Of a stretch of DNA of 64,000 nt, positions 1-61,895 are shown piece by piece. The stretch is taken from the NCBI GenBank assembly GCA_964057225.1, contig OZ059900.1, forward strand, positions 10,478,001 to 10,542,000. Reading direction: 5' to 3'. The notes beneath the pieces are model-generated. The model was given only the letters and a program-made list of their open reading frames with translations, was not told the DNA's origin and did not search any database. Within the stretch, counting starts at the first letter, position 1, and each line of letters begins with the position of its first letter. Made by a program: the position numbers and the translations under genes. The DNA comes from Auanema rhodensis (taxonomy: Eukaryota; Animalia; Nematoda).

Positions 1-104
1 TTGCAATATTCCGTGAAAATCTTTCGCCTTTTACTAAAGATTTCCGTGCATAGGGACGCATATGAGTATCTTTCTTTTTGGAATCCCCTCGAAAGAGCGG
101 GACA
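1..104 (+). ncRNA. U5: U5 snRNA copy, 5'-truncated by the window edge
   Basis: Contains aaatctttCGCCTTTTACTaaagattt (stem Ic/loop I) and the 3' hairpin; the first ~15 nt lie outside the window. Confidence 0.93.
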
Positions 105-291
105 TCAGCATATCAAAGCTTCAGATATAACAGGGTTGTAATATCTACAGCCTTCTTTAAAGAAAACAGCGGATTCAAAAGAAATAAAATAAACTGTAGT
201 TTGCTTTCATCTACAGTATGTATAGTTACATATATACATATAATTAACTTCCATATGATTACGTACATTTCGGGAGAGTGAGATATGGTTA

Positions 292-314
292 CCGAAAACT
301 CGAATGATATACGG
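292..314 (+). promoter_or_regulatory. Proximal sequence element (PSE, SNAPc site) of the U5 gene; repeated in every unit
   Basis: ccgaaaactcg-aatga-tatacgg lies at about -65..-43 from the inferred U5 +1 (357). Position and bipartite form resemble the C. elegans snRNA PSE as I recall it (GCGGAACCCG-N5-TGTCGG). It stays near-invariant even in the diverged edge copies. Confidence 0.7.
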
Positions 315-356
315 ATATCACCATCATAGGCCATGTTGCATGATGTTATACAGTCA

Positions 357-475
357 ACTTCTCTGGTTCCTTTGCAATATTCCGTGAAAATCTTTCGCCT
401 TTTACTAAAGATTTCCGTGCATAGGGACGCATATGAGTATCTTTCTTTTTGGAATCCCCTCGAAAGAGCGGGACA
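357..475 (+). ncRNA. U5: U5 spliceosomal snRNA, first complete copy (representative; recurs every ~371 bp to 53181)
   Basis: Universally conserved loop I CGCCUUUUAC(U) at 396-406 is closed by aaatcttt/aaagattt (388-395/407-414). It is followed by CCGUG, lower stem gttcct.tgca/tgca.agggac and ctc/gag, a U-rich Sm-position segment (441-452) and 3' hairpin tccc-ctc-GAAA-gag-c-ggga. Colinear with metazoan/nematode U5 as recalled (CUCUGGUUCC...CCGUGAAAAUCUUUCGCCUUUUACUAAAGAUUUCCGUGCA...GAGUAU...UUUUUGGA...GCGGG). Ends uncertain by a few nt. Confidence 0.96.
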
Positions 476-727
476 TCAGCATATCAAAGCTTCAGATATA
501 ACAGGGTTGTAATATCTACAGCCTTCTTTAAAGAAAACAGCGGATTCAAAAGAAATAAAATAAACTGTAGTTTGCTTTCATCTACAGTATGTATAGTTAC
601 ATATATACATATAATTAACTTCCATATGATTACGTACATTTCGGGAGAGTGAGATATGGTTACCGAAAACTCGAATGATATACGGATATCACCATCATAG
701 GCCATGTTGCATGATGTTATACAGTCA

Positions 728-3700
728 ACTTCTCTGGTTCCTTTGCAATATTCCGTGAAAATCTTTCGCCTTTTACTAAAGATTTCCGTGCATAGGGACG
801 CATATGAGTATCTTTCTTTTTGGAATCCCCTCGAAAGAGCGGGACATCAGCATATCAAAGCTTCAGATATAACAGGGTTGTAATATCTACAGCCTTCTTT
901 AAAGAAAACAGCGGATTCAAAAGAAATAAAATAAACTGTAGTTTGCTTTCATCTACAGTATGTATAGTTACATATATACATATAATTAACTTCCATATGA
1001 TTACGTACATTTCGGGAGAGTGAGATATGGTTACCGAAAACTCGAATGATATACGGATATCACCATCATAGGACATGTTGCATGATGTTATACAGTCAAC
1101 TTCTCTGGTTCCTTTGCAATATTCCGTGAAAATCTTTCGCCTTTTACTAAAGATTTCCGTGCATAGGGACGCATATGAGTATCTTTCTTTTTGGAATCCC
1201 CTCGAAAGAGCGGGACATCAGCATATCAAAGCTTCAGATATAACAGGGTTGTAATATCTACAGCCTTCTTTAAAGAAAACAGCGGATTCAAAAGAAATAA
1301 AATAAACTGTAGTTTGCTTTCATCTACAGTATGTATAGTTACATATATACATATAATTAACTTCCATATGATTACGTACATTTCGGGAGAGTGAGATATG
1401 GTTACCGAAAACTCGAATGATATACGGATATCACCATCATAGGCCATGTTGCATGATGTTATACAGTCAACTTCTCTGGTTCCTTTGCAATATTCCGTGA
1501 AAATCTTTCGCCTTTTACTAAAGATTTCCGTGCATAGGGACGCATATGAGTATCTTTCTTTTTGGAATCCCCTCGAAAGAGCGGGACATCAGCATATCAA
1601 AGCTTCAGATATAACAGGGTTGTAATCAGCCTTCTTTAAAGAAAACAGCGGATTCAAAAGAAATAAAATAAACTGTAGTTTGCTTTCATCTACAGTATGT
1701 ATAGTTACATATATACATATAATTAACTTCCATATGATTACGTACATTTCGGGAGAGTGAGATATGGTTACCGAAAACTCGAATGATATACGGATATCAC
1801 CATCATAGGCCATGTTGCATGATGTTCTACAGTCAACTTCTCTGGTTCCTTTGCAATATTCCGTGAAAATCTTTCGCCTTTTACTAAAGATTTCCGTGCA
1901 TAGGGACGCATATGAGTATCTTTCTTTTTGGAATCCCCTCGAAAGAGCGGGACATCAGCATATCAAAGCTTCAGATATAACAGGGTTGTAATATCTACAG
2001 CCTTCTTTAAAGAAAACAGCGGATTCAAAAGAAATAAAATAAACTGTAGTTTGCTTTCATCTACAGTATGTATAGTTACATATATACATATAATTAACTT
2101 CCATATGATTACGTACATTTCGGGAGAGTGAGATATGGTTACCGAAAACTCGAATGATATACGGATATCACCATCATAGGCCATGTTGCATGATGTTATA
2201 CAGTCAACTTCTCTGGTTCCTTTGCAATATTCCGTGAAAATCTTTCGCCTTTTACTAAAGATTTCCGTGCATAGGAACGCATATGAGTATCTTTCTTTTT
2301 GGAATCCCCTCGAAAGAGCGGGACATCAGCATATCAAAGCTTCAGATATAACAGGGTTGTAATATCTACAGCCTTCTTTAAAGAAAACAGCGGATTCAAA
2401 AGAAATAAAATAAACTGTACTTTGCTTTCATCTACAGTATGTATAGTTACATATATACATATAATTAACTTCCATATGATTACGTACATTTCGGGAGAGT
2501 GAGATATGGTTACCGAAAACTCGAATGATATACGGATATCACCATCATAGGCCATGTTGCATGATGTTATACAGTCAACTTCTCTGGTTCCTTTGCAATA
2601 TTCCGTGAAAATCTTTCGCCTTTTACTAAAGATTTCCGTGCATAGGAACGCATATGAGTATCTTTCTTTTTGGAATCCCCTCGAAAGAGCGGGACATCAG
2701 CATATCAAAGCTTCAGATATAACAGGGTTGTAATATCTACAGCCTTCTTTAAAGAAAACAGCGGATTCAAAAGAAATAAAATAAACTGTAGTTTGCTTTC
2801 ATCTACAGTATGTATAGTTACATATATACATATAATTAACTTCCATATGATTACGTACATTTCGGGAGAGTGAGATATGGTTACCGAAAACTCGAATGAT
2901 ATACGGATATCACCATCATAGGCCATGTTGCATGATGTTATACAGTCAACTTCTCTGGTTCCTTTGCAATATTCCGTGAAAATCTTTCGCCTTTTACTAA
3001 AGATTTCCGTGCATAGGAACGCATATGAGTATCTTTCTTTTTGGAATCCCCTCGAAAGAGCGGGACATCAGCATATCAAAGCTTCAGATATAACAGGGTT
3101 GTAATATCTACAGCCTTCTTTAAAGAAAACAGCGGATTCAAAAGAAATAAAATAAACTGTAGTTTGCTTTCATCTACAGTATGTATAGTTACATATATAC
3201 ATATAATTAACTTCCATATGATTACGTACATTTCGGGAGAGTGAGATATGGTTACCGAAAACTCGAATGATATACGGATATCACCATCATAGGCCATGTT
3301 GCATGATGTTATACAGTCAACTTCTCTGGTTCCTTTGCAATATTCCGTGAAAATCTTTCGCCTTTTACTAAAGATTTCCGTGCATAGGAACGCATATGAG
3401 TATCTTTCTTTTTGGAATCCCCTCGAAAGAGCGGGACATCAGCATATCAAAGCTTCAGATATAACAGGGTTGTAATCAGCCTTCTTTAAAGAAAACAGCG
3501 GATTCAAAAGAAATAAAATAAACTGTAGTTTGCTTTCATCTACAGTATGTATAGTTACATATATACATATAATTAACTTCCATATGATTACGTACATTTC
3601 GGGAGAGTGAGATATGGTTACCGAAAACTCGAATGATATACGGATATCACCATCATAGGCCATGTTGCATGATGTTATACAGTCAACTTCTCTGGTTCCT

Positions 3701-6700
3701 TTGCAATATTCCGTGAAAATCTTTCGCCTTTTACTAAAGATTTCCGTGCATAGGAACGCATATGAGTATCTTTCTTTTTGGAATCCCCTCGAAAGAGCGG
3801 GACATCAGCATATCAAAGCTTCAGATATAACAGGGTTGTAATATCTACAGCCTTCTTTAAAGAAAACAGCGGATTCAAAAGAAATAAAATAAACTGTAGT
3901 TTGCTTTCATCTACAGTATGTATAGTTACATATATACATATAATTAAGTTCCATGTCATTACGTACATTTCGGGAGAGTGAGATATGGTTACCGAAAACT
4001 CGAATGATATACGGATATCACCATCATAGGCCATGTTGCATGATGTTATACAGTCAACTTCTCTGGTTCCTTTGCAATATTCCGTGAAAATCTTTCGCCT
4101 TTTACTAAAGATTTCCGTGCATAGGAACGCATATGAGTATCTTTCTTTTTGGAATCCCCTCGAAAGAGCGGGACATCAGCATATCAAAGCTTCAGATATA
4201 ACAGGGTTGTAATATCTACAGCCTTCTTTAAAGAAAACAGCGGATTCAAAAGAAATAAAATAAACTGTAGTTTGCTTTCATCTACAGTATGTATAGTTAC
4301 ATATATACATATAATTAACTTCCATATGATTACGTACATTTCGGGAGAGTGAGATATGGTTACCGAAAACTCGAATGATATACGGATATCACCATCATAG
4401 GCCATGTTGCATGATGTTATACAGTCAACTTCTCTGGTTCCTTTGCAATATTCCGTGAAAATCTTTCGCCTTTTACTAAAGATTTCCGTGCATAGGAACG
4501 CATATGAGTATCTTTCTTTTTGGAATCCCCTCGAAAGAGCGGGACATCAGCATATCAAAGCTTCAGATATAACAGGGTTGTAATCAGCCTTCTTTAAAGA
4601 AAACAGCGGATTCAAAAGAAATAAAATAAACTGTAGTTTGCTTTCATCTACAGTATGTATAGTTACATATATACATATAATTAACTTCCATATGATTACG
4701 TACATTTCGGGAGAGTGAGATATGGTTACCGAAAACTCGAATGATATACGGATATCACCATCATAGGCCATGTTGCATGATGTTATACAGTCAACTTCTC
4801 TGGTTCCTTTGCAATATTCCGTGAAAATCTTTCGCCTTTTACTAAAGATTTCCGTGCATAGGAACGCATATGAGTATCTTTCTTTTTGGAATCCCCTCGA
4901 AAGAGCGGGACATCAGCATATCAAAGCTTCAGATATAACAGGGTTGTAATATCTACAGCCTTCTTTAAAGAAAACAGCGGATTCAAAAGAAATAAAATAA
5001 ACTGTAGTTTGCTTTCATCTACAGTATGTATAGTTACATATATACATATAATTAACTTCCATATGATTACGTACATTTCGGGAGAGTGAGATATGGTTAC
5101 CGAAAACTCGAATGATATACGGATATCACCATCATAGGCCATGTTGCATGATGTTATACAGTCAACTTCTCTGGTTCCTTTGCAATATTCCGTGAAAATC
5201 TTTCGCCTTTTACTAAAGATTTCCGTGCATAGGAACGCATATGAGTATCTTTCTTTTTGGAATCCCCTCGAAAGAGCGGGACATCAGCATATCAAAGCTT
5301 CAGATATAACAGGGTTGTAATATCTACAGCCTTCTTTAAAGAAAACAGCGGATTCAAAAGAAATAAAATAAACTGTAGTTTGCTTTCATCTACAGTATGT
5401 ATAGTTACATATATACATATAATTAACTTCCATATGATTACGTACATTTCGGGAGAGTGAGATATGGTTACCGAAAACTCGAATGATATACGGATATCAC
5501 CATCATAGGCCATGTTGCATGATGTTATACCGTCAACTTCTCTGGTTCCTTTGCAATATTCCGTGAAAATCTTTCGCCTTTTACTAAAGATTTCCGTGCA
5601 TAGGGACGCATATGAGTATCTTTCTTTTTGGAATCCCCTCGAAAGAGCGGGACATCAGCATATCAAAGCTTCAGATATAACAGGGTTGTAATATCTACAG
5701 CCTTCTTTGAAGAAAACAGCGGATTCAAAAGAAATAAAATAAACTGTAGTTTGCTTTCATCTACAGTATGTATAGTTACATATATACATATAATTAACTT
5801 CCATATGATTACGTACATTTCGGGAGAGTGAGATATGGTTACCGAAAACTCGAATGATATACGGATATCACCATCATAGGCCATGTTGCATGATGTTATA
5901 CAGTCAACTTCTCTGGTTCCTTTGCAATATTCCGTGAAAATCTTTCGCCTTTTACTAAAGATTTCCGTGCATAGGGACGCATATGAGTATCTTTCTTTTT
6001 GGAATCCCCTCGAAAGAGCGGGACATCAGCATATCAAAGCTTCAGATATAACAGGGTTGTAATATCTAGAGCCTTCTTTAAAGAAAACAGCGGACTCAAA
6101 AGAAATAAAATAAACTGTAGTTTGCTTTCATCTACAGTATGTATAGTTACATATATACATATAATTAACTTCCATATGATTACGTACATTTCGGGAGAGT
6201 GAGATATGGTTACCGAAAACTCGAATGATATACGGATATCACCATCATAGGCCATGTTGCATGATGTTATACAGTCAACTTCTCTGGTTCCTTTGCAATA
6301 TTCCGTGAAAATCTTTCGCCTTTTACTAAAGATTTCCGTGCATAGGGACGCATATGAGTATCTTTCTTTTTGGAATCCCCTCGAAAGAGCGGGACATCAG
6401 CATATCAAAGCTTCAGATATAACAGGGTTGTAATATCTACAGCCTTCTTTAAAGAAAACAGCGGATTCAAAAGAAATAAAATAAACTGTAGTTTGCTTTC
6501 ATCTACAGTATGTATAGTTACATATATACATATAATTAACTTCCATATGATTACGTACATTTCGGGAGAGTGAGATATGGTTACCGAAAACTCGAATGAT
6601 ATACGGATATCACCATCATAGGCCATGTTGCATGATATTATACAGTCAACTTCTCTGGTTCCTTTGCAATATTCCGTGAAAATCTTTCGCCTTTTACTAA

Positions 6701-9700
6701 AGATTTCCGTGCATAGGGACGCATATGAGTATCTTTCTTTTTGGAATCCCCTCGAAAGAGCGGGACATCAGCATATCAAAGCTTCAGATATAACAGGGTT
6801 GTAATATCTACAGCCTTCTTTAAAGAAAACAGCGGATTCAAAAGAAATAAAATAAACTGTAGTTTGCTTTCATCTACAGTATGTATAGTTACATATATAC
6901 ATATAATTAACTTCCATATGATTACGTACATTTCGGGAGAGTGAGATATGGTTACCGAAAACTCGAATGATATACGGATATCACCATCATAGGCCATGTT
7001 GCATGATGTTCTACAGTCAACTTCTCTGGTTCCTTTGCAATATTCCGTGAAAATCTTTCGCCTTTTACTAAAGATTTCCGTGCATAGGGACGCATATGAG
7101 TATCTTTCTTTTTGGAATCCCCTCGAAAGAGCGGGACATCAGCATATCAAAGCTTCAGATATAACAGGGTTGTAATATCTACAGCCTTCTTTAAAGAAAA
7201 CAGCGGATTCAAAAGAAATAAAATAAACTGTAGTTTGCTTTCATCTACAGTATGTATAGTTACATATATACATATAATTAACTTCCATATGATTACGTAC
7301 ATTTCGGGAGAGTGAGATATGGTTACCGAAAACTCGAATGATATACGGATATCACCATCATAGGCCATGTTGCATGATGTTATACAGTCAACTTCTCTGG
7401 TTCCTTTGCAATATTCCGTGAAAATCTTTCGCCTTTTACTAAAGATTTCCGTGCATAGGGACGCATATGAGTATCTTTCTTTTTGGAATCCCCTTGAAAG
7501 AGCGGGACATCAGCATATCAAAGCTTCAGATATAACAGGGTTGTAATATCTACAGCCTTCTTTAAAGAAAACAGCGGACTCAAAAGAAATAAAATAAACT
7601 GTAGTTTGCTTTCATCTACAGTATGTATAGTTACATATATACATATAATTAACTTCCATATGATTACGTACATTTCGGGAGAGTGAGATATGGTTACCGA
7701 AAACTCGAATGATATACGGATATCACCATCATAGGCCATGTTGCATGATGTTATACAGTCAACTTCTCTGGTTCCTTTGCAATATTCCGTGAAAATCTTT
7801 CGCCTTTTACTAAAGATTTCCGTGCATAGGGACGCATATGAGTATCTTTCTTTTTGGAATCCCCTCGAAAGAGCGGGACATCAGCATATCAAAGCTTCAG
7901 ATATAACAGGGTTGTAATATCTACAGCCTTCTTTAAAGAAAACAGCGGATTCAAAAGAAATAAAATAAACTGTAGTTTGCTTTCATCTACAGTATGTATA
8001 GTTACATATATACATATAATTAACTTCCATATGATTACGTACATTTCGGGAGAGTGAGATATGGTTACCGAAAACTCGAATGATATACGGATATCACCAT
8101 CATAGGCCATGTTGCATGATATTATACAGTCAACTTCTCTGGTTCCTTTGCAATATTCCGTGAAAATCTTTCGCCTTTTACTAAAGATTTCCGTGCATAG
8201 GGACGCATATGAGTATCTTTCTTTTTGGAATCCCCTCGAAAGAGCGGGACATCAGCATATCAAAGCTTCAGATATAACAGGGTTGTAATATCTACAGCCT
8301 TCTTTAAAGAAAACAGCGGATTCAAAAGAAATAAAATAAACTGTAGTTTGCTTTCATCTACAGTATGTATAGTTACATATATACATATAATTAACTTCCA
8401 TATGATTACGTACATTTCGGGAGAGTGAGATATGGTTACCGAAAACTCGAATGATATACGGATATCACCATCATAGGCCATGTTGCATGATGTTCTACAG
8501 TCAACTTCTCTGGTTCCTTTGCAATATTCCGTGAAAATCTTTCGCCTTTTACTAAAGATTTCCGTGCATAGGGACGCATATGAGTATCTTTCTTTTTGGA
8601 ATCCCCTCGAAAGAGCGGGACATCAGCATATCAAAGCTTCAGATATAACAGGGTTGTAATATCTACAGCCTTCTTTAAAGAAAACAGCGGATTCAAAAGA
8701 AATAAAATAAACTGTAGTTTGCTTTCATCTACAGTATGTATAGTTACATATATACATATAATTAACTTCCATATGATTACGTACATTTCGGGAGAGTGAG
8801 ATATGGTTACCGAAAACTCGAATGATATACGGATATCACCATCATAGGCCATGTTGCATGATGTTATACAGTCAACTTCTCTGGTTCCTTTGCAATATTC
8901 CGTGAAAATCTTTCGCCTTTTACTAAAGATTTCCGTGCATAGGGACGCATATGAGTATCTTTCTTTTTGGAATCCCCTTGAAAGAGCGGGACATCAGCAT
9001 ATCAAAGCTTCAGATATAACAGGGTTGTAATATCTACAGCCTTCTTTAAAGAAAACAGCGGACTCAAAAGAAATAAAATAAACTGTAGTTTGCTTTCATC
9101 TACAGTATGTATAGTTACATATATACATATAATTAACTTCCATATGATTACGTACATTTCGGGAGAGTGAGATATGGTTACCGAAAACTCGAATGATATA
9201 CGGATATCACCATCATAGGCCATGTTGCATGATGTTATACAGTCAACTTCTCTGGTTCCTTTGCAATATTCCGTGAAAATCTTTCGCCTTTTACTAAAGA
9301 TTTCCGTGCATAGGGACGCATATGAGTATCTTTCTTTTTGGAATCCCCTCGAAAGAGCGGGACATCAGCATATCAAAGCTTCAGATATAACAGGGTTGTA
9401 ATCAGCCTTCTTTAAAGAAAACAGCGGATTCAAAAGAAATAAAATAAACTGTAGTTTGCTTTCATCTACAGTATGTATAGTTACATATATACATATAATT
9501 AACTTCCATATGATTACGTACATTTCGGGAGAGTGAGATATGGTTACCGAAAACTCGAATGATATACGGATATCACCATCATAGGCCATGTTGCATGATG
9601 TTATACAGTCAACTTCTCTGGTTCCTTTGCAATATTCCGTGAAAATCTTTCGCCTTTTACTAAAGATTTCCGTGCATAGGGACGCATATGAGTATCTTTC

Positions 9701-12700
9701 TTTTTGGAATCCCCTCGAAAGAGCGGGACATCAGCATATCAAAGCTTCAGATATAACAGGGTTGTAATATCTACAGCCTTCTTTAAAGAAAACAGCGGAT
9801 TCAAAAGAAATAAAATAAACTGTAGTTTGCTTTCATCTACAGTATGTATAGTTACATATATACATATAATTAACTTCCATATGATTACGTACATTTCGGG
9901 AGAGTGAGATATGGTTACCGAAAACTCGAATGATATACGGATATCACCATCATAGGCCATGTTGCATGATGTTATACAGTCAACTTCTCTGGTTCCTTTG
10001 CAATATTCCGTGAAAATCTTTCGCCTTTTACTAAAGATTTCCGTGCATAGGGACGCATATGAGTATCTTTCTTTTTGGAATCCCCTCGAAAGAGCGGGAC
10101 ATCAGCATATCAAAGCTTCAGATATAACAGGGTTGTAATATCTACAGCCTTCTTTAAAGAAAACAGCGGATTCAAAAGAAATAAAATAAACTGTAGTTTG
10201 CTTTCATCTACAGTATGTATAGTTACATATATACATATAATTAACTTCCATATGATTACGTACATTTCGGGAGAGTGAGATATGGTTACCGAAAACTCGA
10301 ATGATATACGGATATCACCATCATAGGCCATGTTGCATGATGTTATACAGTCAACTTCTCTGGTTCCTTTGCAATATTCCGTGAAAATCTTTCGCCTTTT
10401 ACTAAAGATTTCCGTGCATAGGGACGCATATGAGTATCTTTCTTTTTGGAATCCCCTCGAAAGAGCGGGACATCAGCATATCAAAGCTTCAGATATAACA
10501 GGGTTGTAATATCTACAGCCTTCTTTAAAGAAAACAGCGGATTCAAAAGAAATAAAATAAACTGTAGTTTGCTTTCATCTACAGTATGTATAGTTACATA
10601 TATACATATAATTAACTTCCATATGATTACGTACATTTCGGGAGAGTGAGATATGGTTACCGAAAACTCGAATGATATACGGATATCACCATCATAGGCC
10701 ATGTTGCATGATGTTATACAGTCAACTTCTCTGGTTCCTTTGCAATATTCCGTGAAAATCTTTCGCCTTTTACTAAAGATTTCCGTGCATAGGGACGCAT
10801 ATGAGTATCTTTCTTTTTGGAATCCCCTCGAAAGAGCGGGACATCAGCATATCAAAGCTTCAGATATAACAGGGTTGTAATATCTACAGCCTTCTTTAAA
10901 GAAAACAGCGGATTCAAAAGAAATAAAATAAACTGTAGTTTGCTTTCATCTACAGTATGTATAGTTACATATATACATATAATTAACTTCCATATGATTA
11001 CGTACATTTCGGGAGAGTGAGATATGGTTACCGAAAACTCGAATGATATACGGATATCACCATCATAGGCCATGTTGCATGATGTTATACAGTCAACTTC
11101 TCTGGTTCCTTTGCAATATTCCGTGAAAATCTTTCGCCTTTTACTAAAGATTTCCGTGCATAGGGACGCATATGAGTATCTTTCTATTTGGAATCCCCTC
11201 GAAAGAGCGGGACATCAGCATATCAAAGCTTCAGATATAACAGGGTTGTAATATCTACAGCCTTCTTTAAAGAAAACAGCGGATTCAAAAGAAATAAAAT
11301 AAACTGTAGTTTGCTTTCATCTACAGTATGTATAGTTACATATATACATATAATTAACTTCCATATGATTACGTACATTTCGGGAGAGTGAGATATGGTT
11401 ACCGAAAACTCGAATGATATACGGATATCACCATCATAGGCCATGTTGCATGATGTTATACAGTCAACTTCTCTGGTTCCTTTGCAATATTCCGTGAAAA
11501 TCTTTCGCCTTTTACTAAAGATTTCCGTGCATAGGGACGCATATGAGTATCTTTCTTTTTGGAATCCCCTCGAAAGAGCGGGACATCAGCATATCAAAGC
11601 TTCAGATATAACAGGGTTGTAATATCTACAGCCTTCTTTAAAGAAAACAGCGGATTCAAAAGAAATAAAATAAACTGTAGTTTGCTTTCATCTACAGTAT
11701 GTATAGTTACATATATACATATAATTAAGTTCCATGTCATTACGTACATTTCGGGAGAGTGAGATATGGTTACCGAAAACTCGAATGATATACAGATATC
11801 ACCATCATAGGCCATGTTGCATGATGTTATACAGTCAACTTCTCTGGTTCCTTTGCAATATTCCGTGAAAATCTTTCGCCTTTTACTAAAGATTTCCGTG
11901 CATAGGGACGCATATGAGTATCTTTCTTTTTGGAATCCCCTCGAAAGAGCGGGACATCAGCATATCAAAGCTTCAGATATAACAGGGTTGTAATATCTAC
12001 AGCCTTCTTTAAAGAAAACAGCGGATTCAAAAGAAATAAAATAAACTGTAGTTTGCTTTCATCTACAGTATGTATAGTTACATATATACATATAATTAAC
12101 TTCCATATGATTACGTACATTTCGGGAGAGTGAGATATGGTTACCGAAAACTCGAATGATATACGGATATCACCATCATAGGCCATGTTGCATGATGTTA
12201 TACAGTCAACTTCTCTGGTTCCTTTGCAATATTCCGTGAAAATCTTTCGCCTTTTACTAAAGATTTCCGTGCATAGGGACGCATATGAGTATCTTTCTTT
12301 TTGGAATCCCCTTGAAAGAGCGGGACATCAGCATATCAAAGCTTCAGATATAACAGGGTTGTAATATCTACAGCCTTCTTTAAAGAAAACAGCGGATTCA
12401 AAAGAAATAAAATAAACTGTAGTTTGCTTTCATCTACAGTATGTATAGTTACATATATACATATAATTAACTTCCATATGATTACGTACATTTCGGGAGA
12501 GTGAGATATGGTTACCGAAAACTCGAATGATATACGGATATCACCATCATAGGCCATGTTGCATGATGTTATACAGTCAACTTCTCTGGTTCCTTTGCAA
12601 TATTCCGTGAAAATCTTTCGCCTTTTACTAAAGATTTCCGTGCATAGGGACGCATATGAGTATCTTTCTTTTTGGAATCCCCTCGAAAGAGCGGGACATC

Positions 12701-39700: not shown

Positions 39701-42700
39701 AAAATCTTTCGCCTTTTACTAAAGATTTCCGTGCATAGGGACGCATATGAGTATCTTTCTTTTTGGAATCCCCTCGAAAGAGCGGGACATCAGCATATCA
39801 AAGCTTCAGATATAACAGGGTTGTAATATCTACAGCCTTCTTTAAAGAAAACAGCGGATTCAAAAGAAATAAAATAAACTGTAGTTTGCTTTCATCTACA
39901 GTATGTATAGTTACATATATACATATAATTAACTTCCATATGATTACGTACATTTCGGGAGAGTGAGATATGGTTACCGAAAACTCGAATGATATACGGA
40001 TATCACCATCATAGGCCATGTTGCATGATGTTATACAGTCAACTTCTCTGGTTCCTTTGCAATATTCCGTGAAAATCTTTCGCCTTTTACTAAAGATTTC
40101 CGTGCATAGGGACGCATATGAGTATCTTTCTTTTTGGAATCCCCTCGAAAGAGCGGGACATCAGCATATCAAAGCTTCAGATATAACAGGGTTGTAATAT
40201 CTACAGCCTTCGTTAAAGAAAACAGCGGATTCATAAGAAATAAAATAAACTGTAGTTTGCTTTCATCTACAGTACGTATAGTTACATATATACATATAAT
40301 CAACTTCCATATGATTACGTACATTTCGGGAGAGTCAGATATGGTTACCGACAACTCGAATGATATACGGATATCACCATCATAGGCCATGTTGCATGAT
40401 GTTATACAGTCAACTTCTCTGGTTCCTTTGCAATATTCCGTGAAAATCTTTCGCCTTTTACTAAAGATTTCCGTGCATAGGGACGCATATGAGTATCTTT
40501 CTTTTTGGAATCCCCTCGAAAGAGCGGGACATCAGCATATCAAAGCTTCAGATATAACAGGGTTGTAATATCTACAGCCTTCTTTAAAGAAAACAGCGGA
40601 TTCAAAAGAAATAAAATAAACTGTAGTTTGCTTTCATCTACAGTACGTATAGTTACATATATACATATAATCAACTTCCATATGATTACGTACATTTCGG
40701 GAGAGTGAGATATGGTTACCGACAACTCGAATGATATACGGATATCACCATCATAGGCCATGTTGCATGATGTTATACAGTCAACTTCTCTGGTTCCTTT
40801 GCAATATTCCGTGAAAATCTTTCGCCTTTTACTAAAGATTTCCGTGCATAGGGACGCATATGAGTATCTTTCTTTTTGGAATCCCCTCGAAAGAGCGGGA
40901 CATCAGCATATCAAAGCTTCAGATATAACAGGGTTGTAATATCTACAGCCTTCTTTAAAGAAAACAGCGGATTCAAAAGAAATAAAATAAACTGTAGTTT
41001 GCTTTCATCTACAGTATGTATAGTTACATATATACATATAATTAACTTCCATATGATTACGTACATTTCGGGAGAGTGAGATATGGTTACCGAAAACTCG
41101 AATGATATACGGATATCACTATTATAGGCCATGTTGCATGATGCTATACAGTCAACTTCTCTGGTTCCTTTGCAATATTCCGTGAAAATCTTTCGCCTTT
41201 TACTAAAGATTTCCGTGCATAGGGACGCATATGAGTATCTTTCTTTTTGGAATCCCCTCGAAAGAGCGGGACATCAGCATATCAAAGCTTCAGATATAAC
41301 AGGGTTGTAATATCTACAACCTTCGTTAAAGAAAACAGCGGATTCAAAAGAAATAAAATAAACTGTAGTTTGCTTTCATCTACAGTATGTATAGTTACAT
41401 ATATACATATAATTAACTTTCATATGATTACGTACATTTCGGGAGAGTGAGATATGGTTACCGAAAACTCGAATTATATACGGATATCACCAACATAGGC
41501 CATGTTGCATGATGTTATACAGTCAACTTCTCTGGTTCCTTTGCAATATTCCGTGAAAATCTTTCGCCTTTTACTAAAGATTTCCGTGCATAGGGACGCA
41601 TATGAGTATCTTTTTTTTTTTGGAATCCCCTCGAAAGAGCGGGACATCAGCATATCAAAGCTTCAGATATAACAGGGTTGTAATATCTACAGCCTTCTTT
41701 AAAGAAAACAGCGGATTCAAAAGAAATAAAATAAACTGTAGTTTGCTTTCATCTACAGTATGTATAGTTACATATATACATATAATTAACTTCCATATGA
41801 TTACGTACATTTCGGGAGAGTGAGATATGGTTACCGAAAACTCGAATGATATACGGATATCACCATCATAGGCCATGTTGCATGATGTTATACAGTCAAC
41901 TTCTCTGGTTCCTTTGCAATATTCCGTGAAAATCTTTCGCCTTTTACTAAAGATTTCCGTGCATAGGGACGCATATGAGTATCTTTCTTTTTGGAATCCC
42001 CTCGAAAGAGCGGGACATCAGCATATCAAAGCTTCAGATATAACAGGGTTGTAATATCTACAACCTTCTTTAAAGAAAACAGCGGATTCAAAAGAAATAA
42101 AATAAACTGTAGTTTGCTTTTATCTACAGTATGTATAGTTACATATATACATATAATTAACTTCCATATGATTACGTACATTTCGGGAGAGTGAGATATG
42201 GTTACCGAAAACTCGAATGATATACGGATATCACCATCATAGGCCATGTTGCATGATGTTATACAGTCAACTTCTCTGGTTCCTTTGCAATATTCCGTGA
42301 AAATCTTTCGCCTTTTACTAAAGATTTCCGTGCATAGGGACGCATATGAGTATCTTTCTTTTTGGAATCCCCTCGAAAGAGCGGGACATCAGCATATCAA
42401 AGCTTCAGATATAACAGGGTTGTAATATCTACAGCCTTCTTTAAAGAAAACAGCGGATTCAAAAGAAATAAAATAAACTGTAGTTTGCTTTTATCTACAG
42501 TATGTATAGTTACATATATACATATAATTAACTTCCATATGATTACGTACATTTCGGGAGAGTGAGATATGGTTACCGAAAACTCGAATGATATACGGAT
42601 ATCACTATTATAGGCCATGTTGCATGATGTTATACAGTCAACTTCTCTGGTTCCTTTGCAATATTCCGTGAAAATCTTTCGCCTTTTACTAAAGATTTCC

Positions 42701-45700
42701 GTGCATAGGGACGCATATGAGTATCTTTCTTTTTGGAATCCCCTCGAAAGAGCGGGACATCAGCATATCAAAGCTTCAGATATAACAGGGTTGTAATATC
42801 TACAGCCTTCTTTAAAGAAAACAGCGGATTCAAAAGAAATAAAATAAACTGTAGTTTGCTTTCATCTACAGTATGTATAGTTACATATATACATATAATT
42901 AACTTCCATATGATTACGTACATTTCGGGAGAGTGAGATATGGTTACCGAAAACTCGAATGATATACGGATATCACTATTATAGGCCATGTTGCATGATG
43001 TTATACAGTCAACTTCTCTGGTTCCTTTGCAATATTCCGTGAAAATCTTTCGCCTTTTACTAAAGATTTCCGTGCATAGGGACGCATATGAGTATCTTTC
43101 TTTTTGGAATCCCCTCGAAAGAGCGGGACATCAGCATATCAAAGCTTCTGATATAACAGGGTTGTAATATCTACAGCCTTCTTTAAAGAAAACAGCGGAC
43201 TCAAAAGAAATAAAATAAACTGTAGTTTGCTTTCATCTACAGTATGTATAGTTACATATATACATATAATTAACTTCCATATGATTACGTACATTTCGGG
43301 AGAGTGAGATATGGTTACCGAAAACTCGAATGATATACGGATATCACCATCATAGGCCATGTTGCATGATGTTATACAGTCAACTTCTCTGGTTCCTTTG
43401 CAATATTCCGTGAAAATCTTTCGCCTTTTACTAAAGATTTCCGTGCATAGGGACGCATATGAGTATCTTTCTTTTTGGAATCCCCTCGAAAGAGCGGGAC
43501 ATCAGCATATCAAAGCTTCAGATATAACAGGGTTGTAATATCTACAGCCTTCGTTAAAGAAAACAGCGGATTCAAAAGAAATAAAATAAACTGTAGTTTG
43601 CTTTCATCTACAGTATGTATAGTTACATATATACATATAATTAACTTCCATATGATTACGTACATTTCGGGAGAGTGAGATATGGTTACCGAAAACTCGA
43701 ATGATATACGGATATCACCATCATAGGCCATGTTGCATGATGTTATACAGTCAACTTCTCTGGTTCCTTTGCAATATTCCGTGAAAATCTTTCGCCTTTT
43801 ACTAAAGATTTCCGTGCATAGGGACGCATATGAGTATCTTTCTTTTTGGAATCCCCTCGAAAGAGCGGGACATCAGCATATCAAAGCTTCAGATATAACA
43901 GGGTTGTAATATCTACAGCCTTCGTTAAAGAAAACAGCGGATTCAAAAGAAATAAAATAAACTGTAGTTTACTTTCATCTACAGTATGTATAGTTACATA
44001 TATACATATAATTAACTTTCATATGATTACGTACATTTCGGGAGAGTGAGATATGGTTACCGAAAACTCGAATGATATACGGATATCACTATCATAGGCC
44101 ATGTTGCATGATGTTATACAGTCAACTTCTCTGGTTCCTTTGCAATATTCCGTGAAAATCTTTCGCCTTTTACTAAAGATTTCCGTGCATAGGGACGCAT
44201 ATGAGTATCTTTCTTTTTGGAATCCCCTCGAAAGAGCGGGACATCAGCATATCAAAGCTTCTGATATAACAGGGTTGTAATATCTACAGCCTTCTTTAAA
44301 GAAAACAGCGGATTCAAAAGAAATAAAATAAACTGTAGTTTGCTTTCATCTACACTATGTATAGTTACATATATACATATAATTAACTTCCATATGATTA
44401 CGTACATTTCGGGAGAGTGAGATATGGTTACCGAAAACTCGAATGATATACGGATATCACCATCATAGGCCATGTTGCATGATGTTATACAGTCAACTTC
44501 TCTGGTTCCTTTGCAATATTCCGTGAAAATCTTTCGCCTTTTACTAAAGATTTCCGTGCATAGGGACGCATATGAGTATCTTTCTTTTTGGAATCCCCTC
44601 GAAAGAGCGGGACATCAGCATATCAAAGCTTCAGATATAACAGGGTTGTAATATCTACAGCCTTCGTTAAAGAAAACAGCGGATTCAAAAGAAATAAAAT
44701 AAACTGTAGTTTACTTTCATCTACAGTATGTATAGTTACATATATACATATAATTAACTTTCATATGATTACGTACATTTCGGGAGAGTGAGATATGGTT
44801 ACCGAAAACTCGAATGATATACGGATATCACTATCATAGGCCATGTTGCATGATGTTATACAGTCAACTTCTCTGGTTCCTTTGCAATATTCCGTGAAAA
44901 TCTTTCGCCTTTTACTAAAGATTTCCGTGCATAGGGACGCATATGAGTATCTTTCTTTTTGGAATCCCCTCGAAAGAGCGGGACATCAGCATATCAAAGC
45001 TTCAGATATAACAGGGTTGTAATATCTACAGCCTTCTTTAAAGAAAACAGCGGATTCAAAAGAAATAAAATAAACTGTAGTTTGCTTTCATCTACAGTAT
45101 GTATAGTTACATATATACATATAATTAACTTCCATATGATTACGTACATTTCGGGAGAGTGAGATATGGTTACCGAAAACTCGAATGATATACGGATATC
45201 ACCATCATAGGCCATGTTGCATGATGTTATACAGTCAACTTCTCTGGTTCCTTTGCAATATTCCGTGAAAATCTTTCGCCTTTTACTAAAGATTTCCGTG
45301 CATAGGGACGCATATGAGTATCTTTTTTTTTTGGAATCCCCTCGAAAGAGCGGGACATCAGCATATCAAAGCTTCTGATATAACAGGGTTGTAATATCTA
45401 CAGCCTTCTTTAAAGAAAACAGCGGATTCAAAAGAAATAAAATAAACTGTAGTTTGCTTTCATCTACAGTATGTATAGTTACATATATACATATAATTAA
45501 CTTTCATATGATTACGTACATTTCGGGAGAGTGAGATATGGTTACCGAAAACTCGAATGATATACGGATATCACCATCATAGGCCATGTTGCATGATGTT
45601 ATACAGTCAACTTCTCTGGTTCCTTTGCAATATTCCGTGAAAATCTTTCGCCTTTTACTAAAGATTTCCGTGCATAGGGACGCATATGAGTATCTTTTTT

Positions 45701-48700
45701 TTTTGGAATCCCCTCGAAAGAGCGGGACATCAGCATATCAAAGCTTCAGATATAACAGGGTTGTAATATCTACAGCCTTCTTTAAAGAAAACAGCGGATT
45801 CAAAAGAAATAAAATAAACTGTAGTTTTCTTTCATCTACAGTATGTATAGTTACATATATACATATAATTAACTTTCATATGATTACGTACATTTCGGGA
45901 GAGTGAGATATGGTTACCGAAAACTCGAATGATATACGGATATCACCATCATAGGCCATGTTGCATGATGTTATACAGTCAACTTCTCTGGTTCCTTTGC
46001 AATATTCCGTGAAAATCTTTCGCCTTTTACTAAAGATTTCCGTGCATAGGGACGCATATGAGTATTTTTCTTTTTGGAATCCCCTCGAAAGAGCGGGACA
46101 TCAGCATATCAAAGCTTCAGATATAACAGGGTTGTAATATCTACAGCCTTCTTTAAAGAAAACAGCGGATTCAAAAGAAATAAAATAAACTGTAGTTTGC
46201 TTTCATCTACAGTATGTATAGTTACATATATACATATAATTAACTTCCATATGATTACGTACATTTCGGGAGAGTGAGATATGGTTACCGAAAACTCGAA
46301 TGATATACGGATACCACCATCATAGGCCATGTTGCATGATGTTACACAGTCAACTTCTCTGGTTCCTTTGCAATATTCCGTGAAAATCTTTCGCCTTTTA
46401 CTAAAGATTTCCGTGCATAGGGACGCATATGAGTATCTTTCTTTTTGGAATCCCCTCGAAAGAGCGGGACATCAGAATATCAAAGCTTCTGATATAACAG
46501 GGTTGTAATATCTACAGCCTTCTTTAAAGAAAACAGCGGATTCAAAAGAAATAAAATAAACTGTAGTTTACGTTAATCTACAGTATGTATAGTTACATAT
46601 ATACATATAATTAACTTCCATATGGTTACGAACATTTCGGGAGAGTGAGATATGGTTACCGAAAACTCGAATGATATACGGATATCACCATCATAGACCA
46701 TGTTGCATGATGTTACACAGTCAACTTCTCTGGTTCCTTTGCAATATTCCGTGAAAATCTTTCGCCTTTTACTAAAGATTTCCGTGCATAGGGACGCATA
46801 TGAGTATTTTTCTTTTTGGAATCCCCTCGAAAGAGCGGGACATCAGCATATCAAAGCTTCAGATATAACAGGGTTGTAATATCTACAGCCTTCTTTAAAG
46901 AAAACAGCGGATTCAAAAGAAATAAAATAAACTGTAGTTTGCTTTCATCTACAGTATGTATAGTTACATATATACATATAATTAACTTCCATATGATTAC
47001 GTACATTTCGAGAGAGTGAGATATGGTTACCGAAAACTCGAATGATATACGGATACCACCATCATAGGCCATGTTGCATGATGTTATACAGTCAACTTCT
47101 CTGGTTCCTTTGCAATATTCCGTGAAAATCTTTCGCCTTTTACTAAAGATTTCCGTGCATAGGGACGCATATGAGCATCTTTCTTTTTGGAATCCCCTCG
47201 AAAGAGCGGGACATCAGCATATCAAAACTTCTGATAAAACAGGGTTGTAATATCTACAGCCTTCTTTGAAGAAAACAGCGAATACAAAAGAAATACAATA
47301 AACTGTAGTTTACTTTCATCTACAGTATGAATGGTTGCATATGTATATATGTATATAATTAACTTCCATATGATTACGTACATTTCGGGAGAGTGAGATA
47401 TGGTTACCGAAAACTCGAATGATATACGGATATCACCATCATAGGCCATGTTGCATGATGTTATACAGTCAACTTCTCTGGTTCCTTTGCAATATTCCGT
47501 GAAAATCTTTCGCCTTTTACTAAAGATTTCCGTGCATAGGGACGCATATGAGCATCTTTCTTTTTGGAATCCCCTCGAAAGAGCGGGACATCAGCATATC
47601 AAAGCTTCTGATAAAACAGGGTTGTAATATCTACAGCCTTCTTTAAAGGAATCAGCGGATTCAAGAGAAATAAAATAAACTGTAGTTTACGTTAATCTAC
47701 AGTATGTATAGTTACATATATACATATAATTAACTTCCATATGGTTACGAACATTTCGGGAGAGTGAGATATGGTTACCGAAAACTCGAATGATATACGG
47801 ATATCACCATCATAGGCCATGTTGCATGATGTTATACAGTCAACTTCTCTGGTTCCTTTGCAATATTCCGTGAAAATCTTTCGCCTTTTACTAAAGATTT
47901 CCGTGCATAGGGACGCATATGAGTATCTTTCTTTTTGGAATCCCCTCGAAAGAGCGGGACATCAGAATATCAAAGCTTCTGATATAACAGGGTTGTAATA
48001 TCTACAGCCTTCTTTAAAGAAAACAGCGGATTCAAAAGAAATAAAATAAACTGTAGTTTACTTTCATCTACAGTATGTATAGTTACATATATACATATAA
48101 TTAACTTCCATATGATTACGTATATTTCGGGAGAGTGAGATATGGTTACCGAAAACTCGAATGATATACGGATATCACCATCATAGACCATGTTGCATGA
48201 TGTTACACAGTCAACTTCTCTGGTTCCTTTGCAATATTCCGTGAAAATCTTTCGCCTTTTACTAAAGATTTCCGTGCATAGGGACGCATATGAGTATCTT
48301 TCTTTTTGGAATCCCCTCGAAAGAGCGGGACATCAGCATATCAAAGCTTCTGATATAATAAGGTTGTAATATCTACAGCCTTCTTTAAAGAAAACAGCGG
48401 ATTCAAAAGAAATAAAATAAACTGTAGTTTACTTTCATCTACAGTATGTATAGTTACATATATACATATAATTAACTTCCATGTCATTACGTACATTTCG
48501 GGAGAGTGAGATATGGTTACCGAAAACTCGAATGATATACGGATATCACCATCATAGGCCATGTTGCATGATGTTATACAGTCAACTTCTCTGGTTCCTT
48601 TGCAATATTCCGTGAAAATCTTTCGCCTTTTACTAAAGATTTCCGTGCATAGGGACGCATATGAGTATCTTTCTTTTTGGAATCCCCTCGAAAGAGCGGG

Positions 48701-51700
48701 ACATCAGCATATCAAAGCTTCTGATATAACAGGATTGTAATATCTACAGCCTTCTTTAAAGAAAACAGCGAATACAAAAGAAATACAATAAACTGTAGTT
48801 TACTTTCATCTACAGTATGAATAGTTACATATGTATATATATATATAATTAACTTCCATATGGTTACGTACATTTCGGGACAGTGAGATATGGTTACCGA
48901 AAACTCGAATGATATACGGATATCACCATCATAGGCCATGTTGCATTATGTTATACAGTCAACTTCTCTGGTTCCTTTGCAATATTCCGTGAAAATCTTT
49001 CGCCTTTTACTAAAGATTTCCGTGCATAGGGACGCATATGAGTATTTTTCTTTTTGGAATCCCCTCGAAAGAGCGGGACATCAGCATATCAAAGCTTCTG
49101 ATATAACAGGATTGTAATATCTACAGCCTTCTTTAAAGAAAACAGCGAATACAAAAGAAATACAATAAACTGTAGTTTACTTTCATCTACAGTATGAATG
49201 GTTGCATATGTATATATGTATATAATTAACTTCCATATGATTACGTACATTTCGGGAGAGTGAGATATGGTTACCGAAAACTCGAATGATATACGGATAT
49301 CACCATCATAGGCCATGTTGCATGATGTTATACAGTCAACTTCTCTGGTTCCTTTGCAATATTCCGTGAAAATCTTTCGCCTTTTACTAAAGATTTCCGT
49401 GCATAGGGACGCATATGAGTATTTTTCTTTTTGGAATCCCCTCGAAAGAGCGGGACATCAGCATATCAAAGCTTCTGATATAACAGGATTGTAATATCTA
49501 CAGCCTTCTTTAAAGAAAACAGCAAATACAAAAGAAATACAATAAACTGTAGTTTACTTTCATCTACAGTATGTATAGTTACATATATACATATAATTAA
49601 CTTCCATATGATTACGTATATTTCGGGAGAGTGAGATATGGTTACCGAAAACTCGAATGATATACGGATATCACCATCATAGACCATGTTGCATGATGTT
49701 ACACAGTCAACTTCTCTGGTTCCTTTGCAATATTCCGTGAAAATCTTTCGCCTTTTACTAAAGATTTCCGTGCATAGGGACGCATATGAGTATCTTTCTT
49801 TTTGGAATCCCCTCGAAAGAGCGGGACATCAGAATATCAAAGCTTCTGATATAACAGGGTTGTAATATCTACAGCCTTCTTTAAAGAAAACAGCGGATTC
49901 AAAAGAAATAAAATAAACTGTAGTTTACTTTCATCTACAGTATGTATAGTTACATATATACATATAATTAACTTCCATATGATTACGTATATTTCGGGAG
50001 AGAGATATGGTTACCGAAAACTCGAATGATATACGGATATCACCATCATAGACCATGTTGCATGATGTTACACAGTCAACTTCTCTGGTTCCTTTGCAAT
50101 ATTCCGTGAAAATCTTTCGCCTTTTACTAAAGATTTCCGTGCATAGGGACGCATATGAGTATCTTTCTTTTTGGAATCCCCTCGAAAGAGCGGGACATCA
50201 GAATATCAAAGCTTCTGATATAACAGGGTTGTAATATCTACAGCCTTCTTTAAAGAAAACAGCGGATTCAAAAGAAATAAAATAAACTGTAGTTTACTTT
50301 CATCTACAGTATGTATAGTTACATATATACATATAATTAACTTCCATATGATTACGTATATTTCGGGAGAGTGAGATATGGTTACCGAAAACTCGAATGA
50401 TATACGGATATCACCATCATAGGCCATGTTGCATGATGTTATACAGTCAACTTCTCTGGTTCCTTTGCAATATTCCGTGAAAATCTTTCGCCTTTTACTA
50501 AAGATTTCCGTGCATAGGGACGCATATGAGCATCTTTCTTTTTGGAATCCCCTCGAAAGAGCGGGACATCAGCATATCAAAGCTTCTGATAAAACAGGGT
50601 TGTAATATCTACAGCCTTCTTTAAAGGAATCAGCGGATTCAAAAGAAATAAAATAAACTGTAGTTTACGTTAATCTACAGTATGTATAGTTACATATATA
50701 CATATAATTAACTTCCATATGATTACGTATATTTCGGGAGAGTGAGATATGGTTACCGAAAACTCGAATGATATACGGATATCACCATCATAGACCATGT
50801 TGCATGATGTTACACAGTCAACTTCTCTGGTTCCTTTGCAATATTCCGTGAAAATCTTTCGCCTTTTACTAAAGATTTCCGTGCATAGGGACGCATATGA
50901 GTATTTTTCTTTTTGGAATCCCCTCGAAAGAGCGGGACATCAGCATATCAAAGCTTCTGATATAACAGGATTGTAATATCTACAGCCTTCTTTGAAGAAA
51001 ACAGCGAATACAAAAGAAATACAATAAACTGTAGTTTACTTTCATCTACAGTATGAATGGTTGCATATGTATATATGTATATAATTAACTTCCATATGAT
51101 TACGTACATTTCGGGAGAGTGAGATATGGTTACCGAAAACTCGAATGATATACGGATATCACCATCATAGGCCATGTTGCATGATGTTATACAGTCAACT
51201 TCTCTGGTTCCTTTGCAATATTCCGTGAAAATCTTTCGCCTTTTACTAAAGATTTCCGTGCATAGGGACGCATATGAGCATCTTTCTTTTTGGAATCCCC
51301 TCGAAAGAGCGGGACATCAGCATATCAAAGCTTCTGATAAAACAGGGTTGTAATATCTACAGCCTTCTTTAAAGGAATCAGCGGATTCAAAAGAAATAAA
51401 ATAAACTGTAGTTTACGTTAATCTACAGTATGTATAGTTACATATATACATATAATTAACTTCCATATGATTACGTATATTTCGGGAGAGTGAGATATGG
51501 TTACCGAAAACTCGAATGATATACGGATATCACCATCATAGACCATGTTGCATGATGTTACACAGTCAACTTCTCTGGTTCCTTTGCAATATTCCGTGAA
51601 AATCTTTCGCCTTTTACTAAAGATTTCCGTGCATAGGGACGCATATGAGTATTTTTCTTTTTGGAATCCCCTCGAAAGAGCGGGACATCAGCATATCAAA

Positions 51701-52805
51701 GCTTCTGATATAACAGGATTGTAATATCTACAGCCTTCTTTGAAGAAAACAGCGAATACAAAAGAAATACAATAAACTGTAGTTTACTTTCATCTACAGT
51801 ATGAATGGTTGCATATGTATATATGTATATAATTAACTTCCATATGATTACGTACATTTCGGGAGAGTGAGATATGGTTACCGAAAACTCGAATGATATA
51901 CGGATATCACCATCATAGGCCATGTTGCATGATGTTATACAGTCAACTTCTCTGGTTCCTTTGCAATATTCCGTGAAAATCTTTCGCCTTTTACTAAAGA
52001 TTTCCGTGCATAGGGACGCATATGAGCATCTTTCTTTTTGGAATCCCCTCGAAAGAGCGGGACATCAGCATATCAAAGCTTCTGATAAAACAGGGTTGTA
52101 ATATCTACAGCCTTCTTTAAAGGAATCAGCGGATTCAAAAGAAATAAAATAAACTGTAGTTTACGTTAATCTACAGTATGTATAGTTACATATATACATA
52201 TAATTAACTTCCATATGATTACGTATATTTCGGGAGAGTGAGATATGGTTACCGAAAACTCGAATGATATACGGATATCACCATCATAGACCATGTTGCA
52301 TGATGTTACACAGTCAACTTCTCTGGTTCCTTTGCAATATTCCGTGAAAATCTTTCGCCTTTTACTAAAGATTTCCGTGCATAGGGACGCATATGAGTAT
52401 CTTTCTTTTTGGAATCCCCTCGAAAGAGCGGGACATCAGCATATCAAAGCTTCTGATATAATAAGGTTGTAATATCTACAGCCTTCTTTAAAGAAAACAG
52501 CGGATTCAAAAGAAATAAAATAAACTGTAGTTTACTTTCATCTACAGTATGTATAGTTACATATATACATATAATTAACTTCCATGTCATTACGTACATT
52601 TCGGGAGAGTGAGATATGGTTACCGAAAACTCGAATGATATACGGATATCACCATCATAGGCCATGTTGCATGATGTTATACAGTCAACTTCTCTGGTTC
52701 CTTTGCAATATTCCGTGAAAATCTTTCGCCTTTTACTAAAGATTTCCGTGCATAGGGACGCATATGAGTATCTTTCTTTTTGGAATCCCCTCGAAAGAGC
52801 GGGAC
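728..52805 (+). ncRNA. U5: 141 further tandem U5 snRNA copies (one per repeat unit)
   Basis: Same U5 sequence in each unit; I saw no loop I substitution in any copy I read. Confidence 0.94.
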
Positions 52806-53062
52806 ATCAGCATATCAAAGCTTCTGATATAACAGGATTGTAATATCTACAGCCTTCTTTAAAGAAAACAGCGAATACAAAAGAAATACAATAAACTGTA
52901 GTTTACTTTCATCTACAGTATGAATAGTTACATATGTATATATATATAATTAACTTCCATATGGTTACGTACATTTCGGGACAGTGAGATATGGTTACCG
53001 AAAACTCGAATGATATACGGATATCACCATCATAGGCCATGTTGCATTATGTTATACAGTCA

Positions 53063-53181
53063 ACTTCTCTGGTTCCTTTGCAATATTCCGTGAAAATCTT
53101 TCGCCTTTTACTAAAGATTTCCGTGCATAGGGACGCATATGAGCATCTTTCTTTTTGGAATCCCCTCGAAAGAGCGGGACA
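53063..53181 (+). ncRNA. U5: U5 snRNA, last copy of the array
   Basis: Intact loop I and stems, with gagCat variant upstream of the U-run; followed by 150 bp of spacer and then unique DNA. Confidence 0.94.
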
Positions 53182-53569
53182 TCAGCATATCAAAGCTTCT
53201 GATAAAACAGGGTTGTAATATCTACAGCCTTCTTTAAAGGAATCAGCGGATTCAAAAGAAATAAAATAAACTGTAGTTTACGTTAATCTACAGTATGTAT
53301 AGTTACATATATACATATAATTAACTTCCATCTGAATCTGGTGTTTTCGTTCGAGAAAGTTAGTAAATTGCCGTTGATTTTCACTCAATTTCACAAATTT
53401 TGATTGTGATGTATACTCCTTTGTATTACGAAACTGATTAAGAAATTGTATTAGATGTTAATTTACATGTCATAAAAAATCAAAAAAAATTGAATATGAA
53501 CAGAAATAAAGTTAATAAACTAAAGACTATTATTGACATTTTTTGGTAATTTCTGATTCTGCCGCTGTT

Positions 53570-55477: not shown

Positions 55478-55778
55478 CTATAGAACTTCGAAGAATTAAA
55501 ATAAAAATGTTAAAACCGACTTACTTTTAGGTTGGGGTTAATTGGAATAAAAATATATAGTTAAGCTATAAAATAAAATAAATTAATAAAGTACAAACAA
55601 ATAATAAAGAAATTACGAATAAAATATAAATAAAATATTAATATATTAAAATATTTAGAGAATTGTCTACCTAAAATAACTTTTGATGACAAATAGATAA
55701 AATTAACAATAGGACGCAAGGATTGTTTGTTTCATAAGCGATTGAGCGCCATAAAAATTAAAATTGTTTTGATTGGAA

Positions 55779-55795
55779 AGAGAGAGAGAGAGAGA
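55779..55795. repeat. (AG)8 microsatellite upstream of the 55477 gene
   Basis: agagagagagagagaga read directly. Confidence 0.85.
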
Positions 55796-61836: not shown

Positions 61837-61895
61837 TGCTTTAAAGGTTTTGCAAAAGTGTTAATGACAAGTCTAAAGTAAATATAATCAAATTC

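What the first reader, a model, noticed from the sequence alone, without database searches (positions are those of the whole stretch)
1..53331. A >53-kb 'satellite' that is really a >=144-copy tandem array of complete U5 snRNA genes
Seen: each 371-bp unit holds a PSE-like element, an intact U5 fold with invariant loop I, and a short spacer; copies are nearly identical and the array continues off-window. Known: C. elegans spliceosomal snRNA genes are low-copy and mostly dispersed; tandem snRNA arrays are known mainly for U1/U2 (e.g. human RNU2) and nematode 5S/SL1. Inference: a compact U5-only array of this size is far out of stoichiometry with normal snRNP needs. It may be a hyper-expressed U5 variant, a U5-derived satellite, or a sink for Prp8/SNAPc.
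Basis: partly seen in the sequence, partly recalled or inferred. Interest (0 to 1): 0.88.

Follow-up and report, generated by a model that had tools for sequence, protein, structure and literature searches.

The report
Tandem array of variant U5 genes
A roundworm chromosome carries at least 143 head-to-tail copies of a gene for U5, one of the RNAs of the splicing machinery; the copies appear to be kept intact by selection although they lack the usual adenine in their protein-ring docking site, but such gene arrays are a known arrangement and seem common in this genome.

Summary
The array is real: 371-bp unit, window 1-53,331, 143 full U5 copies plus a cut one, Rfam U5 74 bits, loop I invariant. 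It is not neutral satellite. No shared variant falls in U5 nt 1-66 (0/66 against 55/251 outside, P~1e-6), and most stem variants keep pairing. No copy has a canonical Sm site: UCUUUUUGGA replaces AAUUUUUGGA, so this is a U5 variant, not a textbook gene. The genome is probably Auanema rhodense (X chromosome, from scan notes; not tested here). A 2026 preprint reports 5S, tRNA and U2 arrays there, and unchecked scan notes found U1, U2, U4 and U6 arrays on other DNA of this genome. U5 tandem arrays are also known in fish. Best reading (0.6): a transcribed, concertedly evolving U5-variant gene family that still loads an Sm ring. What remains of interest is the A-less Sm site.

The parts
1..53331 (+). 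Head-to-tail array of a 371-bp unit (length variants 366-377), open at the window start; 143 full U5 copies plus one cut copy
356..475 (+). First full U5-variant RNA coding region (about 120 nt; 5' end inferred from the Rfam model and the L001 alignment)
356..421 (+). U5 nt 1-66 (5' part of stem-loop I, including loop I): strongly constrained, 2 singleton variants and no shared variant
397..407 (+). Loop I, invariant in all aligned copies
444..453 (+). Non-canonical Sm site UCUUUUUGGA (AA replaced by UC); no copy has RAU4-6G
   Evidence: C. elegans U5 consensus AAU4-5GGA from PMC2200864
455..473 (+). 3' stem-loop II with GAAA tetraloop; same sequence as in the soil-nematode U5 L001
290..319 (+). 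Candidate PSE at about -65 to -36; identity as a PSE not established
   Evidence: position only; conservation not significant
476..726 (+). Non-coding spacer of 251 nt, variable (71/251 sites), with AT-rich hairpin-forming stretches
45981..53331 (+). Edge zone of about 20 more divergent units (about 10 differences from consensus against about 2 inside), with recombinant haplotypes
53062..53181 (+). Last U5 copy; the array stops in the spacer after it, before the next promoter region

Best explanation
This is a tandem multigene family (snDNA array) of a U5 snRNA variant that evolves in concert. Shown: near-identical head-to-tail units; shared variants clustered locally, as unequal crossing-over or conversion produces; purifying selection on the 5' domain of the RNA; pair-keeping changes in the stems; an Sm site without its adenine. 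Inferred: each unit is a Pol II snRNA transcription unit (promoter in the spacer, RNA of about 120 nt), and the RNA still receives an Sm ring on CUUUUUG and works as U5 in spliceosomes. The amplification is part of a genome-wide tendency in this nematode (probably Auanema rhodense) to build tandem arrays of small-RNA genes, not a U5-specific adaptation. High copy number may offset less efficient Sm loading (speculative). The array probably lies in DNA kept in body cells (weak inference).
For: Rfam 74.4 bits over the full model. Shared minor alleles 0/66 in nt 1-66 against 55/251 outside U5, Fisher P=8e-7; P=7e-4 in the first 120 units alone and in the last 22 alone; singletons are not depleted (2/66 against 16/251), as expected when selection stops variants from spreading. 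Stem variants: 6 of 8 keep pairing (0.31 expected, P=0.013); pair-breaking 2 against 8.5 expected (P=0.009); a loop variant keeps a GNRA tetraloop. No shared variant breaks the U5-GG tract. Shared alleles span 28 units on average against 85 at random; four-gamete pairs 243/2628. Other small-RNA arrays in the genome: preprint and scan notes.
Against: The Sm consensus is not met in any copy. In human Gemin5 binding an A-to-C change is strongly deleterious, and Sm-site variants are degraded in human cells. The 3' half (nt 67-120) is not significantly depleted of variants (13 observed, 16.8 expected). The PSE is not shown. There is no expression evidence: no holder run is on record as RNA, and the guessed RNA runs hold only 5-8% of the words.
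Confidence: 0.6

Rival explanations
1. A recently amplified U5 pseudogene turned satellite: the founder had already lost its Sm adenine, and the unit spreads neutrally.
For: Non-canonical Sm site in every copy; the likely host genome accumulates tandem repeats on a very large scale; PSE unproven; no RNA evidence.
Against: A neutral repeat should vary evenly; nt 1-66 have no shared variant against 22% of spacer sites, and stem changes keep pairing. Conversion from a few dispersed U5 genes would have to outweigh 143 or more local copies.
Confidence: 0.17
2. The array is transcribed but the RNA loads Sm poorly. It is mostly degraded or acts as a decoy for loop-I and stem-I binders (PRP-8, Snu114), with selection only on the 5' domain.
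For: Constraint is concentrated in nt 1-66, while linker, Sm region and 3' stem are near spacer levels by site count; the Sm adenine is missing.
Against: The U5-GG tract and the 3' stem are kept, and their variants mostly keep pairing. U5 3' domains are variable in working variants too (own knowledge). No benefit of such a decoy is known.
Confidence: 0.12
3. The variant is loaded by a specialised Sm or Lsm ring (as for U7, or trypanosome variant Sm cores) and defines a distinct, possibly stage- or sex-biased U5 snRNP encoded on the X.
For: The changed Sm site is fixed across a selected, high-copy family; X location per scan note s1-373167.
Against: No evidence here for Sm paralogues; a tolerant ordinary ring is simpler; X location is untested.
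Confidence: 0.08
4. An assembly artefact (over-expanded repeat).
For: Very high unit identity; read depth could not be checked.
Against: 80 distinct units among 142, with local clustering, a divergence gradient and recombinant edge units; 95% of the unit's words are held in four runs of an independent 2019 study, two of them very small.
Confidence: 0.03

Closest known systems
U5 snRNA (Rfam RF00020), rhabditid type; nearest sequence obtained is a soil-metagenome U5 (L001)
   Same: Full model match, invariant loop I, 105/125 aligned positions identical to L001, same 3' stem-loop.
   Different: Sm site UCUUUUUGGA instead of AAU4-5GGA (C. elegans, PMC2200864) or CAAUUUUUGC (L001); linker 2 nt shorter; 143 or more copies in tandem, whereas C. 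elegans U5 genes are few (9 bound by ATTF-6 in PMC11822377).
Tandem snDNA arrays: primate RNU2; fish U2-U5 and U1-U2-U5 arrays (PMC3464664)
   Same: Head-to-tail units, concerted evolution, coding part less variable than spacer.
   Different: U5 alone in a very compact 371-bp unit (the fish unit is about 1 kb and includes U2), and the amplified gene is an Sm-site variant.
Small-RNA gene arrays of Auanema rhodense (bioRxiv 10.64898/2026.08.27.747507)
   Same: Probably the same genome; arrays of 5S, tRNA and U2 are reported there.
   Different: U5 is not named in the text (Tables S3 and S4 were not readable). The germline-restricted ncRNA arrays are said to cover under 20% per 10 kb, whereas U5 is 32% of this array, and no break motif lies between the array and the neighbouring genes.
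Variant snRNAs with altered Sm sites (human vU1 and vU2 variants; U7; trypanosome variant Sm cores)
   Same: The Sm site departs from RAU4-6G.
   Different: Human variants are low-copy and degraded by quality control (PMC12667742); U7 and trypanosome sites have dedicated rings (own knowledge). No such ring was tested here.

Membership tests
U5 snRNA (RF00020) | Covariance-model hit above the gathering score over the full model | tested here: met
   74.4 bits against 40, positions 1-117/117
U5 snRNA (RF00020) | Invariant loop I on stem-loop I | tested here: met
   No variant in 142 aligned units; fold
U5 snRNA (RF00020) | Canonical Sm site RAU4-6G before the 3' stem-loop | tested here: not met
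   0 of 142 copies; UCUUUUUGGA in most; 6 copies gain an AU5C one register upstream. Filed as a U5 variant, not canonical U5.
U5 snRNA (RF00020) | 3' stem-loop II | tested here: met
U5 snRNA (RF00020) | Proximal sequence element upstream | tested here: inconclusive
   Right distance, conservation not significant; no consensus could be sourced
U5 snRNA (RF00020) | Expressed, TMG-capped, Sm-bound RNA in snRNP | not testable with these tools
Concertedly evolving snRNA gene array (RNU2-like snDNA) | Head-to-tail near-identical units with locally shared variants | tested here: met
Concertedly evolving snRNA gene array (RNU2-like snDNA) | Coding part less variable than spacer | tested here: met
   15/120 against 71/251 sites, P=6e-4; the signal lies in nt 1-66
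Neutral satellite or pseudogene array | Variation spread evenly over the unit | tested here: not met
Germline-restricted tandem block (programmed DNA elimination) | Palindromic break motif or telomere addition between repeat and genes | tested here: inconclusive
   No short-spaced GGC..GCC palindrome or telomere run in the window, but the exact motif matrix was not available and the far end of the array is off-window
Germline-restricted tandem block (programmed DNA elimination) | Low read depth in somatic DNA | not testable with these tools

The most novel reading that the evidence does not exclude
The array supplies most of this worm's U5, so its spliceosomes run largely on a U5 whose Sm site lacks the conserved adenine, loaded either by a relaxed Gemin5-free pathway or by a dedicated variant Sm ring, with X-linked dosage differing between XX and XO animals.
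Probability: 0.12. Interest if true: 0.72.

Novelty: new variant of a known kind. Interest (0 to 1): 0.38.

Why it matters
If the variant is expressed and Sm-bound, it is a natural test of how strict the Sm-site code is in an animal lineage that lacks Gemin5, and it shows that selection can police individual snRNA copies inside an array of more than 140, as in rDNA. The array as such matters less: tandem snRNA arrays, including U5, are known, and this genome appears to array all five spliceosomal snRNAs.

Tried and rejected
The four FISH probes of the preprint do not match the window (9 or more mismatches), so the unit cannot be tied to AT-1, XR-1, XT-1 or XT-2 by those probes. The classic papers on C. 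elegans snRNA genes and yeast Sm-site tolerance were not retrievable with the ids I tried, so the PSE consensus stays untested. The flanking gene was searched exon by exon by reference, without joining: no homologue, so neither gene nor species was identified by protein. A nematode-type U5 pattern in metagenomes gave only 2 contigs; neither looked human. Literature searches found no report of a nematode U5 array; the library is incomplete. A bacterial promoter scan was uninformative. No strict higher-order repeat: shared alleles recur at spacings of 1-5 units. SNAPc sink rejected for lack of constraint on the upstream region.

Full report
Observation. The window holds one tandem array from base 1 to about 53,331, period 371, 143.7 copies, 98% matches. 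I count 143 U5 5' ends (356 to 53,062) and a cut copy at the window start; 120 of 142 spacings are exactly 371 and the rest are 366-377. Each unit scores 74.4 bits on Rfam U5 over the whole model, E 2.8e-12. Loop I does not vary. The array ends in the spacer after the last gene and is followed by unique, intron-rich DNA with no further U5. The core observation stands.

Two parts of the description do not hold as written. First, the Sm site is not canonical. C. elegans U5 has AAU4-5GGA (PMC2200864), and a soil-metagenome nematode U5 that I fetched (L001; 105/125 identical, same 3' hairpin) has CAAUUUUUGC. The array has UCUUUUUGGA, and none of 142 copies matches RAU4-6G. Nine copies extend the U-tract and six gain an AU5C one register upstream, but none restores A-U5-G. 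Second, the PSE is only a guess from position: it is not significantly more conserved than the spacer, and I could not source a consensus.

Is it real DNA? There are 80 distinct units among 142. Shared minor alleles span on average 28 units against 85 at random. Divergence from the consensus rises from about 2 to about 10 differences in the last 20 units, and 243 of 2,628 site pairs show all four gametes. This is the trace of unequal exchange, not of a copied contig. Four DNA runs of an independent 2019 study hold 95% of the unit's sampled words, two of them runs of only 17 and 28 million letters, which suggests high copy number (inference).

Is it under selection? The U5 part has 15 variable sites in 120 against 71 in 251 outside (P=6e-4). 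The signal lies in nt 1-66: no shared variant against 55/251 (P=8e-7), and it holds separately in the first 120 and the last 22 units (P=7e-4 each); singletons are not depleted. Nt 1-27 alone give 1 against 7.3 expected (P=0.0015). In stem Ib and stem-loop II, 6 of 8 variants keep pairing (P=0.013), and pair-breaking alleles number 2 against 8.5 expected (P=0.009). The 3' half as a whole is not depleted by site count (13 against 16.8). Caveats: linked variants are not independent, and gene conversion from other U5 loci could mimic constraint. Even so, a neutral satellite fits badly.

Where is it from? Scan notes (unchecked) place this piece on the X chromosome of Auanema rhodense, about 3.7 Mb from a DNA-elimination break site. 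The run list fits the 2019 data set cited by the preprint, but names are coded and my protein searches on flanking exons found nothing, so the species is likely, not shown. The preprint 10.64898/2026.08.27.747507 reports 19,554 tRNA genes and germline-restricted arrays of 5S, tRNA and U2; it does not name U5 in the text. Scan notes list U1+tRNA-Asp, U2+5S, U4+5S and two U6 arrays of tens to over a hundred copies on other pieces, and dispersed U5 genes. If these are right, all five spliceosomal snRNAs are amplified, and the stoichiometry argument falls. The array may be soma-retained: no break-motif-like palindrome or telomere run separates it from the genes, and its U5 density (32%) exceeds the under-20% given for eliminated ncRNA arrays. 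This is a weak inference. A note placing a U2 gene 293 kb before the window would cap the array at about 900 copies.

How it most likely works. Shown: unit anatomy, homogenisation by local exchange, constraint on the 5' domain, missing Sm adenine. Inferred: Pol II transcription of each unit into an RNA of about 120 nt, Sm loading on CUUUUUG, and use as U5. In humans Gemin5 reads this adenine, and A-to-C sharply lowers binding (PMC5131778); Sm-site variants are degraded (PMC12667742). C. elegans has no Gemin5 homologue (PMC6601512; one abstract, names Gemin5 where its results test Gemin2), so a nematode may tolerate the change. Whether Auanema also lacks Gemin5 was not tested. I give this reading 0.6; amplified pseudogene 0.17; Sm-poor decoy 0.12; specialised ring 0.08; artefact 0.03.

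Comparison with what is known. Tandem snRNA arrays are an established arrangement, and U5 occurs in them in fish (U2-U5, PMC3464664). I found no report of a nematode U5 array, in an incomplete library. The RNA works like U5 but fails one defining feature, so I file it as a U5 variant in a known kind of array. Verdict: new variant of a known kind; interest 0.38. The part worth an experiment is the A-less Sm site kept across a selected, high-copy family.

Noticed in passing
window 53,700-62,200, minus strand: Large multi-exon gene with 26 MNMT motifs in repeated exon cassettes (59,052-61,518) and a coiled-coil-like exon near 54,250-54,700. It resembles KNL-1 by its MELT-like repeats, but no homologue was found exon by exon.
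   Followed up: partly
window 56,650-57,130 and 61,896-62,203: Further internal duplications of exon-intron cassettes (about 300-bp spacing and a 155-bp tandem pair) in the same gene region.
   Followed up: no
window 53,270-53,316 (and the matching part of each unit): Two adjacent AT-rich hairpin-forming inverted repeats in the spacer (fold z -4.15); the ATAT tract expands in the 375-377-bp edge units.
   Followed up: partly
runs X6-X8, X10-X12: Runs labelled as four other organisms hold 68-92% of the unit's words, spacer included: either very close relatives or cross-contamination by a high-copy repeat.
   Followed up: no
L002:1140-1260, minus strand: Another invertebrate-type U5 from a metagenome also lacks a canonical Sm site (AAUAUUUCU) and has a different 3' stem; origin unknown, single copy on its contig.
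   Followed up: no
window 45,981-53,331: Six edge copies carry C86U, which creates AUUUUUC just upstream of the A-less site, a possible alternative Sm register.
   Followed up: partly
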